A stretch of 61,092 bases of DNA, filler included, from Dugesia japonica (lineage: Eukaryota): assembly GCA_001938525.1 (NCBI GenBank). It is 4 parts of 4 records of this genome, joined end to end, with 100 filler letters (N's around TTAATTAATTAA, not from the genome) between each part and the next. Parts side by side here need not be neighbours in the genome. Positions count along the whole stretch, not along the records: positions 1 to 20,707 come from MQRL01557940.1; 3 more parts are not named here. The stretch is one strand, 5' to 3'. This document shows positions 13,186 through 13,372 of the stretch, in pieces. The notes under the pieces are model-generated. The model saw only the letters and a program-made list of their open reading frames with translations, did no database searches and was not told the DNA's origin. Both the position numbers and the translations under genes were made by a program. Numbering within the stretch: the first letter of the stretch is position 1; every line of letters starts with the position of its first letter.

Positions 13186-13372
13186 TGTTGGGGTCCCACC
13201 TGAGTTGGGTCACAATGAAAAGTGGCTGGGAAAAACAGCCCTCAAGGGAACCCTTTCAAGAATTTACCCTACCGTCCCTGTGGTAGATTTTCAGTTTATG
13301 GCGGTTGACCTTACTCTTAATGGAAGGTGCTCACCGATAAACCTTTAATTTCGGGTTCTATATTTTTCCCTA
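13186..13372 (-). ncRNA. Conserved structured RNA element at the 3' end of the element (copy 1)
   Basis: Multi-hairpin region conserved with 46597-46782 and showing compensatory substitutions. A G-U pair works only on the minus strand. Confidence 0.65.

What the first reader, a model, noticed from the sequence alone, without database searches (positions are those of the whole stretch)
13186..13372. Covarying multi-stem RNA structure at the element 3' terminus
Seen on the minus strand, copy 1 vs copy 2: outer stem GTTTAT.GGTG/CGCCATAAAC vs GTGTA.GAGTG/CACTCTACAC; inner stem ACCTT/AAGGT vs ACCTCC/GGAGGT; stem CTACC/GGTAG vs CTAAA/TTTAG around an invariant CAGGGAC loop; and a GGCTG-U5-CAGCC hairpin. 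Several double substitutions keep pairing while neighbouring spacers have diverged. The CAGGGAC loop can pair with downstream GTTCCCT/GTCCCCTG, allowing a pseudoknot or switch. Inference: a cis-acting RNA (packaging, export, stability or replication signal), which favours an RNA intermediate.
Basis: partly seen in the sequence, partly recalled or inferred. Interest (0 to 1): 0.8.

Follow-up and report, generated by a model that had tools for sequence, protein, structure and literature searches.

The report
Predicted RNA stems after orphan gene
The fold is no more stable than chance, and the second copy needed to test covariation is not in this piece or in any searchable collection.

Summary
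The four named stems dominate the predicted ensemble, with pair probabilities of 0.77-1.0.

The folding energy is ordinary: z about -0.3 for the 187 nt, and the region is not an outlier along the locus. The only mild single-sequence hints are a better-defined sense-strand ensemble (19 of 300 shuffles as good) and three G.U pairs that fit the sense strand only.

No Rfam family matches, even with lax filters. 'Copy 2' is not in this piece, and no relative was found in any protein or DNA collection. The central covariation claim is therefore untested.

The block is non-coding and 45% GC between flanks of at most 28% GC. It lies 63 nt after the stop of a minus-strand unit of four GC-richer ORF blocks separated by AT-rich spacers. 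That unit has no known domain and no homologue.

A well-formed poly(A) signal, which also reads as an acceptor-like site, stands between the stop and the block. Whether the block is in the mature RNA is therefore open.

There is no reverse transcriptase, A-tail, LTR, TIR or target duplication, so the 'RNA intermediate' idea has no support.

The parts
13186..13372 (-). The finding: a 187-nt non-coding block at 45% GC between AT-rich flanks, predicted to fold into three separate domains
   Evidence: Sequence. GC per 60 nt is 0.40-0.47 against at most 0.28 in the flanks. The sense strand has stops in all three frames, and its longest open frame is 24 codons. No Rfam match.
13294..13342 (-). Domain 1: a two-tier hairpin. 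The outer helix has 10 pairs with one bulged C and one U.G pair. An inner 5-bp helix (ACCUU/AAGGU) sits above an internal loop.
   Evidence: Pair probabilities are 0.77-0.98. z = -1.89 when cut out after the fact.
13269..13286 (-). Domain 2: the CUACC/GGUAG hairpin with the 8-nt loop ACAGGGAC
   Evidence: Pair probabilities are 0.88-1.0, falling to about 0.65 with long upstream context. z = -2.5 on the sense strand and -2.75 on the antisense strand.
13191..13253 (-). Domain 3: a 13-bp helix (13253-13241 with 13191-13204, one bulge, two U.G pairs) that encloses the GGCUG/CAGCC hairpin (13240-13224, loop UUUUUCC).
   Evidence: (pair probabilities 0.98-1.0). z = -1.96 on the sense strand against -0.44 on the antisense strand.
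13373..13434 (-). Spacer between the stop and the block, which can be read two ways. It holds AATAAA (13420-13415), CA (13405-13404) and a U/GU-rich run (13402-13379), which together look like a poly(A) site. The same T-run followed by CATAG, ending at 13373, looks like a 3' splice site.
   Evidence: Read from the sequence. Neither reading was tested.
13435..15291 (-). Gene-like unit of four GC-richer ORF blocks separated by AT-rich spacers. The four ORFs are 60, 124, 119 and 127 aa. Block 2 also carries an overlapping 51-aa ORF in a second frame, so its reading frame changes once. The unit has no known domain and no homologue. The last block is predicted to be one long helix.
   Evidence: ORFs. 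The sense ORFs of blocks 2-4 are longer than in 99.3-100% of shuffles. Pfam gives only weak coiled-coil noise. No relatives. AF2 shows a helix over residues 8-91 with pLDDT above 90. No in-frame GT-AG model was found for two of the three junctions.
13036..13111 (.). Run of 76 N, 75 nt beyond the end of the block. It hides whatever follows the unit, and it was left as it is.

Best explanation
The block is the non-coding 3' part of a lineage-specific, minus-strand gene (or gene-like repeated unit) that encodes helical, coiled-coil-like protein. It is either the 3' UTR or a terminal untranslated exon.

As sense-strand RNA it folds into three independent domains: a two-tier hairpin, a small hairpin presenting ACAGGGAC, and a long helix capped by the GGCUG hairpin.

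The most likely role is that of a cis-acting 3'-end element that binds a protein and sets the stability, localisation or translation of that transcript.

Shown: the position, the non-coding nature, the GC content kept at the level of the coding blocks, and the predicted stems.

Inferred: that the block is transcribed with the gene, that it is conserved, and that the structure is what is selected.
For: - All copy-1 stems are present and dominate the ensemble.
- The block starts 63 nt after the stop of the last ORF, on the same strand.
- It is non-coding, with a longest sense frame of 24 codons. The 57-codon antisense frame is at chance level, matched by 33% of shuffles, and has no family.
- It keeps 45% GC, while the spacers inside the same unit have the AT-rich composition of the surrounding DNA. 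This suggests constraint like that on the coding blocks.
- Three G.U pairs would be A.C mismatches on the other strand.
- Domain 3 and the whole-block ensemble look structured on the sense strand only.
If the copy-2 quotes are equally exact and lie at matching positions, about five pairs change on both sides with none broken. I counted this by hand from the finding's text and did not verify it.
Against: - The folding energy is not better than that of shuffles.
- The ensemble measures are only suggestive, at about 6% of shuffles.
- No Rfam family matches.
- No second sequence is available, so neither conservation nor covariation is shown.
- An AATAAA, a CA and a U/GU-rich run between the stop and the block could end the mRNA upstream of it.
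- The gene model is itself uncertain. There is one change of frame in block 2 and no clean in-frame splice model for two junctions, so this copy may be a decayed one.
Confidence: 0.45

Rival explanations
1. The stems are chance stems in a relic. The block is a decayed former exon or other remnant that still has the GC content of the unit. Its stems are what any 45% GC sequence of this length gives, and the 'covariation' came from picking matching stems by eye in two diverged copies.
For: - The energy z is about -0.3, and 35-39% of shuffles fold as well.
- The region is not an outlier along the locus.
- No Rfam match.
- The unit shows signs of decay: one frame change, and no clean splice model for two junctions.
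- The sub-hairpin z-scores come from windows chosen after the fact.
Against: - The sense-strand-only definition of the ensemble, and the G.U pairs.
- Sense-strand stops are more frequent than in 99.4% of shuffles, which a recently decayed exon would not show.
Confidence: 0.33
2. The block is the 3'-terminal recognition structure of a retroelement-like unit that is copied through RNA, in the way that LINE and SINE 3' tails are bound by their reverse transcriptase.
For:
- The predicted stem-loops are on the sense strand.
- An assembly gap follows the unit, as often happens at repeats.
Against: - No reverse transcriptase, endonuclease, gag or integrase domain is found in any ORF of 13.4-16.6 kb.
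- There is no A-rich or short-repeat tail after 13186.
- There is no LTR or target duplication.
- AT-rich, intron-like spacers persist inside the unit.
- There is only one copy in 20.7 kb.
That is the pattern of old paralogous genes under selection, not of recent transposed copies.
Confidence: 0.08
3. The block is a separate small non-coding RNA gene lying downstream of the poly(A) site of the protein gene.
For: - An AATAAA, a CA and a U/GU-rich run precede the block.
- The GC-rich island is compact and sharply bounded, with a well-defined predicted fold.
Against: - No Rfam family, even at E up to 10.
- No tRNA-like gene.
- Internal T5 and T4 runs would stop RNA polymerase III inside the block.
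- No promoter evidence.
Confidence: 0.07
4. The stems are DNA-level hairpins at the end of a DNA transposon, for example the sub-terminal 3' hairpin of a Helitron that has captured gene fragments.
For: The unit carries exon-like and intron-like pieces, as captured genes do. GC-rich hairpins lie close to where the similarity is said to end.
Against: - There is no CTRR-type end just after a hairpin.
- No Rep/helicase or transposase domain.
- No terminal inverted repeats.
- G.U pairs count for RNA but not for DNA.
Confidence: 0.05

Closest known systems
Structured cis-elements in mRNA 3' UTRs (stability, localisation or translational-control stem-loops)
   Same: It lies just after the stop codon on the sense strand, forms several short independent stem-loops with exposed loops, and has no coding capacity.
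   Different: It matches no curated family (Rfam). Whether it is in the mature transcript is unknown, because a poly(A)-like signal precedes it. Conservation is unverified.
3'-tail stem-loops of non-LTR retrotransposons and their partner SINEs, recognised by the element's reverse transcriptase (established knowledge, not tested against a named sequence)
   Same: Stem-loops at the 3' end of a repeated unit, on the sense strand.
   Different: There is no reverse transcriptase ORF, no tail of A or short repeats, and no target duplication. The unit has intron-like spacers.
Self-cleaving ribozymes carried by repeats (hammerhead in Penelope-like elements and retrozymes, HDV-like in some non-LTR elements)
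   Same: A small multi-stem RNA associated with a repeated unit.
   Different: No hit to any ribozyme model of Rfam, even at E up to 10 on the 349-nt stretch alone.
Iron-responsive element
   Same: A short hairpin whose loop begins CAG.
   Different: The loop is the 8-nt ACAGGGAC, not the 6-nt CAGUGN, and the stem has no bulged C. The Rfam IRE models do not match.

Membership tests
Any Rfam family (4227 covariance models) | Score at or near the family's gathering threshold | tested here: not met
   The whole piece gave 0 matches at E up to 1. With lax filters, 13112-13460 at E up to 10 gave only a 10-bit noise match outside the block.
Conserved structured RNA (generic) | Base pairs that covary across independent sequences above phylogenetic background | not testable with these tools
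   Only one sequence is available. Copy 2 is absent from the piece, and no relatives were found in any collection.
Conserved structured RNA (generic) | Folding energy lower than that of composition-matched shuffles | tested here: not met
   z = -0.38 and -0.28 for the 187 nt. The region is not an outlier in the sliding scan. Ensemble diversity gives z = -1.49, with 19 of 300 shuffles as good, which is only suggestive.
mRNA 3'-UTR cis-element | Lies in the mature transcript, between the stop codon and the poly(A) site actually used | tested here: inconclusive
   The block is 63 nt after the stop on the same strand. However, an AATAAA, a CA and a U/GU-rich run lie in between, and the same run also reads as a splice acceptor. 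No expression data are available.
Non-LTR retrotransposon or SINE 3' tail | A reverse transcriptase (and endonuclease) ORF in the autonomous element | tested here: not met
   Pfam finds no such domain in any stop-free ORF of 13.4-16.6 kb.
Non-LTR retrotransposon or SINE 3' tail | A 3' end of poly(A) or short tandem repeats, with flanking target-site duplications | tested here: not met
   The sequence after 13186 is mixed AT-rich with no A-run. No flanking direct repeats were found. The N run at 13036-13111 limits this test.
Self-cleaving ribozymes (hammerhead, HDV-like, twister and others) | A conserved catalytic core within the family's fold | tested here: not met
   No covariance-model hit at E up to 10. 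Cleavage itself cannot be tested here.
Helitron 3' end | A hairpin a few bases before a terminal CTRR, and a Rep/helicase gene in autonomous copies | tested here: not met
   No CTRR follows the last hairpin within the usual distance. No Rep/helicase domain.

The most novel reading that the evidence does not exclude
The block is a previously undescribed, selectively maintained three-domain RNA at the 3' end of a family of orphan coiled-coil genes, or gene-like repeats, in a very AT-rich invertebrate-type genome.
Probability: 0.2. Interest if true: 0.55.

Novelty: new member of a known kind. Interest (0 to 1): 0.3.

Why it matters
If the covariation holds in a real alignment, this would be a new structured 3'-end RNA motif tied to a gene family with no homologues anywhere. 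It would give a handle on how those transcripts are controlled in a poorly sampled lineage. As it stands, it is a plausible but unproven 3' non-coding structure. Its practical value lies in showing what is missing: the second copy and expression data.

Tried and rejected
**Relatives**
- Word searches with the peptides of block 4, block 2 and the 373-aa neighbour found nothing.
- A full HMMER search with the block-4 peptide against 1.84 billion representatives gave 0 hits.
- Viral contigs were searched with three block peptides and the neighbour, without result.
- An exact 17-mer scan of viral contigs gave one chance hit in unrelated 54% GC sequence.
- Scans with the pattern CAGGGAC..GGCTGTTTTT..CAGCC gave 21 stretches in metagenomes and 25 in prokaryotic genomes. 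A blast check of the metagenome hits and the viral hit showed nothing beyond the pattern. The 25 genome hits were not blast-checked. Their record titles are all bacterial, and by my rough estimate their number is of the order expected by chance.
- Five exact look-ups all came back 'not on record'.
- The source genome is evidently in none of the collections.

**Spliced model**
- The block peptides were searched one by one, by reference.
- The two frames of block 2 were not joined.

**Families**
- Pfam, PHROGs, NCBIfam and PDB sequence searches gave only coiled-coil noise.

**Structure**
- AF2 on single sequences gave one long helix for block 4 and a low-confidence model for block 2.
- I skipped fold search, because a lone helix or a pLDDT-41 model gives meaningless matches.

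**Rejected readings**
- An antisense coding exon: the 57-codon frame is at chance level and has no family.
- A tRNA-like or SINE origin.
- A second copy at 15889-15883: unrelated context.
- An LTR, TIR or target-duplication structure.
- A phage relation.

Full report
**What the window is**

The piece (places 1-20707) is very AT-rich DNA: 28% GC overall and 21-25% over long stretches. CpG is not depleted (observed/expected 0.93). There are several N runs of uneven length, tandem and interspersed repeats, and very few long ORFs. It looks like a gene-poor stretch of a eukaryotic, invertebrate-type assembly. I could not name the organism. No protein of the window has a relative in the collections, and none is on record by exact look-up.

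**The observation**

- outer stem 13342-13332 with 13303-13294
- inner stem 13328-13324 with 13312-13308
- CTACC/GGTAG at 13286-13282 and 13273-13269, around the loop ACAGGGAC
- GGCTG/CAGCC at 13240-13236 and 13228-13224, with the loop UUUUUCC
- GTTCCCT at 13251-13245

RNAfold places all four stems in the minimum-energy structure. Their pair probabilities are 0.77-1.0, whether the block is folded alone, with its flanks, or with the upstream ORF. Only the small CTACC hairpin drops, to about 0.65, in the longest context.

It encloses the GGCTG hairpin. The predicted architecture is therefore three domains: a two-tier hairpin, a small hairpin, and a long capped helix.

**Is it more than chance?**

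By energy it is not.
- The 187 nt give z = -0.38 and -0.28 against dinucleotide-preserving shuffles.
- The longer 329-nt stretch gives z = -0.35.
- In a 100-nt sliding scan of 13112-16000, the region scores between -1.6 and +1.1, while some coding windows reach -2.8.
- Sub-hairpins cut out after the fact give z from -1.4 to -2.5, which is biased by the way they were chosen.

Two weaker measures lean towards a sense-strand structure.
- Ensemble diversity and positional entropy are lower than in about 90-94% of shuffles on the minus strand, but not on the plus strand.
- Domain 3 gives z = -1.96 on the sense strand against -0.44 on the antisense strand, because its two U.G pairs become A.C mismatches on the other strand. 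A third U.G pair sits in the outer stem of domain 1.

None of this is significant on its own.

**Copy 2**

The central claim is compensatory change between two copies, and this piece holds only one.
- The other CAGGGAC, at 15889-15883, lies in unrelated sequence.
- The copy-2 strings are absent even when mismatches are allowed.
- blastn with word size 7 and tblastn of the block peptides find no second copy.

I tried every route to relatives.
- Word searches.
- The full HMMER search with the last block, which gave 0 hits in 1.84 billion representatives.
- Viral contigs by protein and by pattern.
- One metagenome scan and one prokaryote-genome scan with a 22-base structural pattern. These gave 21 and 25 stretches. 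The metagenome hits share nothing with the query beyond the pattern. The genome hits all carry bacterial record titles; I did not blast-check them.
- Exact look-ups.

Nothing related exists in reach, so covariation is untested.

A hand count on the strings in the finding gives about five pairs changed on both sides, one G.U changed to A.U, and none broken, out of about 20 pairs. That would be hard to get by chance if the strings are accurate and lie at matching positions.

**Pseudoknot or switch**

The ACAGGGAC loop can form only 5 pairs (AGGGA with UCCCU) with GTTCCCT. That stretch is fully engaged in the 13-bp helix. In this copy GTCCCCTG occurs only upstream, inside the last ORF. A switch is conceivable, but it is speculative and would be energetically uphill.

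**Surroundings**

The block is the last of five GC-richer islands between 13151 and 15300 on a 20-28% GC background. The other four islands each carry a long minus-strand ORF of 60, 124, 119 and 127 aa.

For blocks 2-4 these ORFs are longer than in 99.3-100% of shuffles, so they are coding or were so recently. The finding block is the opposite: its longest sense frame is 24 codons, shorter than in 99.4% of shuffles. The 57-codon antisense frame is at chance level (33% of shuffles) and has no family.

The spacers between islands are 18-30% GC, like the background.

Block 2 carries one change of reading frame. Each of the four ORFs ends in a stop at the edge of its island. A simple search for in-frame GT-AG introns found one candidate for the first junction only. 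For the last junction the only candidate removes most of the two ORFs, and for the middle junction there was none. The exon model is therefore open, and this copy may be partly decayed.

I searched the blocks one by one, by reference.

**What the unit encodes**

- No Pfam, PHROGs, NCBIfam or PDB match goes beyond coiled-coil noise.
- AlphaFold on the single sequence gives one confident long helix for the last block (residues 8-91, pLDDT above 90).
- It gives nothing usable for block 2 (pLDDT 41).
- A short WDL-type motif recurs in blocks 2 and 3 (family D1).

**Is the block in the transcript?**

Between the stop (13437-13435) and the block lie AATAAA (13420-13415), a CA 10 nt further on, and then a U/GU-rich run (13402-13379). 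Together these make a textbook poly(A) site, which would end the mRNA about 32 nt before the block.

The same T-run followed by CATAG, ending at 13373, also reads as a good 3' splice site. In that case the block would be a terminal untranslated exon.

In DNA this AT-rich, either could be chance. Only expression data can decide.

**The 'RNA intermediate' idea**

Nothing supports it.
- No reverse transcriptase, gag, integrase or transposase domain is found in any ORF of 13.4-16.6 kb.
- There is no A-tail or short-repeat tail after 13186.
- There are no LTRs, TIRs or target duplications.
- The intron-like spacers are retained.

**Known families**

No Rfam model matches the whole piece at E up to 1. 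Scanning the 349-nt stretch alone with lax filters at E up to 10 also finds nothing in the block. That search includes the ribozyme, IRE and other 3'-UTR families. There is no tRNA-like gene.

**Verdict**

The stems of copy 1 are real and well defined, but they are not statistically exceptional. The covariation that made the finding interesting cannot be checked here.

The best reading, at about 45%, is a cis-acting structured 3' non-coding element of an orphan helical-protein gene. Close behind, at about a third, is that these are chance stems in a relic. The retroelement reading is unlikely.

Noticed in passing
window 6923-8044 (+): An intact 373-aa ORF beginning MG, remarkable in 24% GC DNA. 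The word search found no relative, Pfam found no family, and the protein is not on record. The only hits are weak PDB matches to the renin receptor/ATP6AP2 (E = 0.002-0.03), which are probably noise.
   Followed up: partly
window 796-1486, 10472-10918 and 18150-18697 (inverted): Three copies of an interspersed repeat family, 67-83% identical over 180-500 nt. None overlaps the finding.
   Followed up: partly
window 1880-2460 and 19628-19801: Tandem arrays. The first has units of about 61-62 nt, C/A-rich on the plus strand, in two adjoining families. The second has three 58-nt units at 91% identity.
   Followed up: no
window 11230-11391 (+) and 11515-11838 (+): A 53-aa ORF with a faint DDE_1 (pogo/Tigger-type transposase) match at E = 0.087. 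Next to it is a 45% GC island carrying a hydrophobic 107-aa ORF with no family. Together these may be a decayed DNA-transposon remnant.
   Followed up: partly
window 2564-2637 and 8629-8701: A 74-nt inverted repeat pair at 84% identity (50-nt core at 92%), 6 kb apart. It also has a nearby direct partner at 2484-2543.
   Followed up: no
window 14214-14236 and 14580-14602: A 23-nt direct repeat at 74% identity that encodes a similar W-D-L-x-R motif in blocks 2 and 3 of the minus-strand unit. This hints at internal repeats in the protein.
   Followed up: no
window 13036-13111: A run of 76 N begins 75 nt after the end of the structured block, so the true downstream context of the unit is hidden.
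   Followed up: no
window 13587-13686 (+): The most negative z-score in the sliding fold scan (-4.1) lies on the antisense strand of the last ORF block, not in the finding region. It comes from a single window with 60 shuffles and was not examined further.
   Followed up: no
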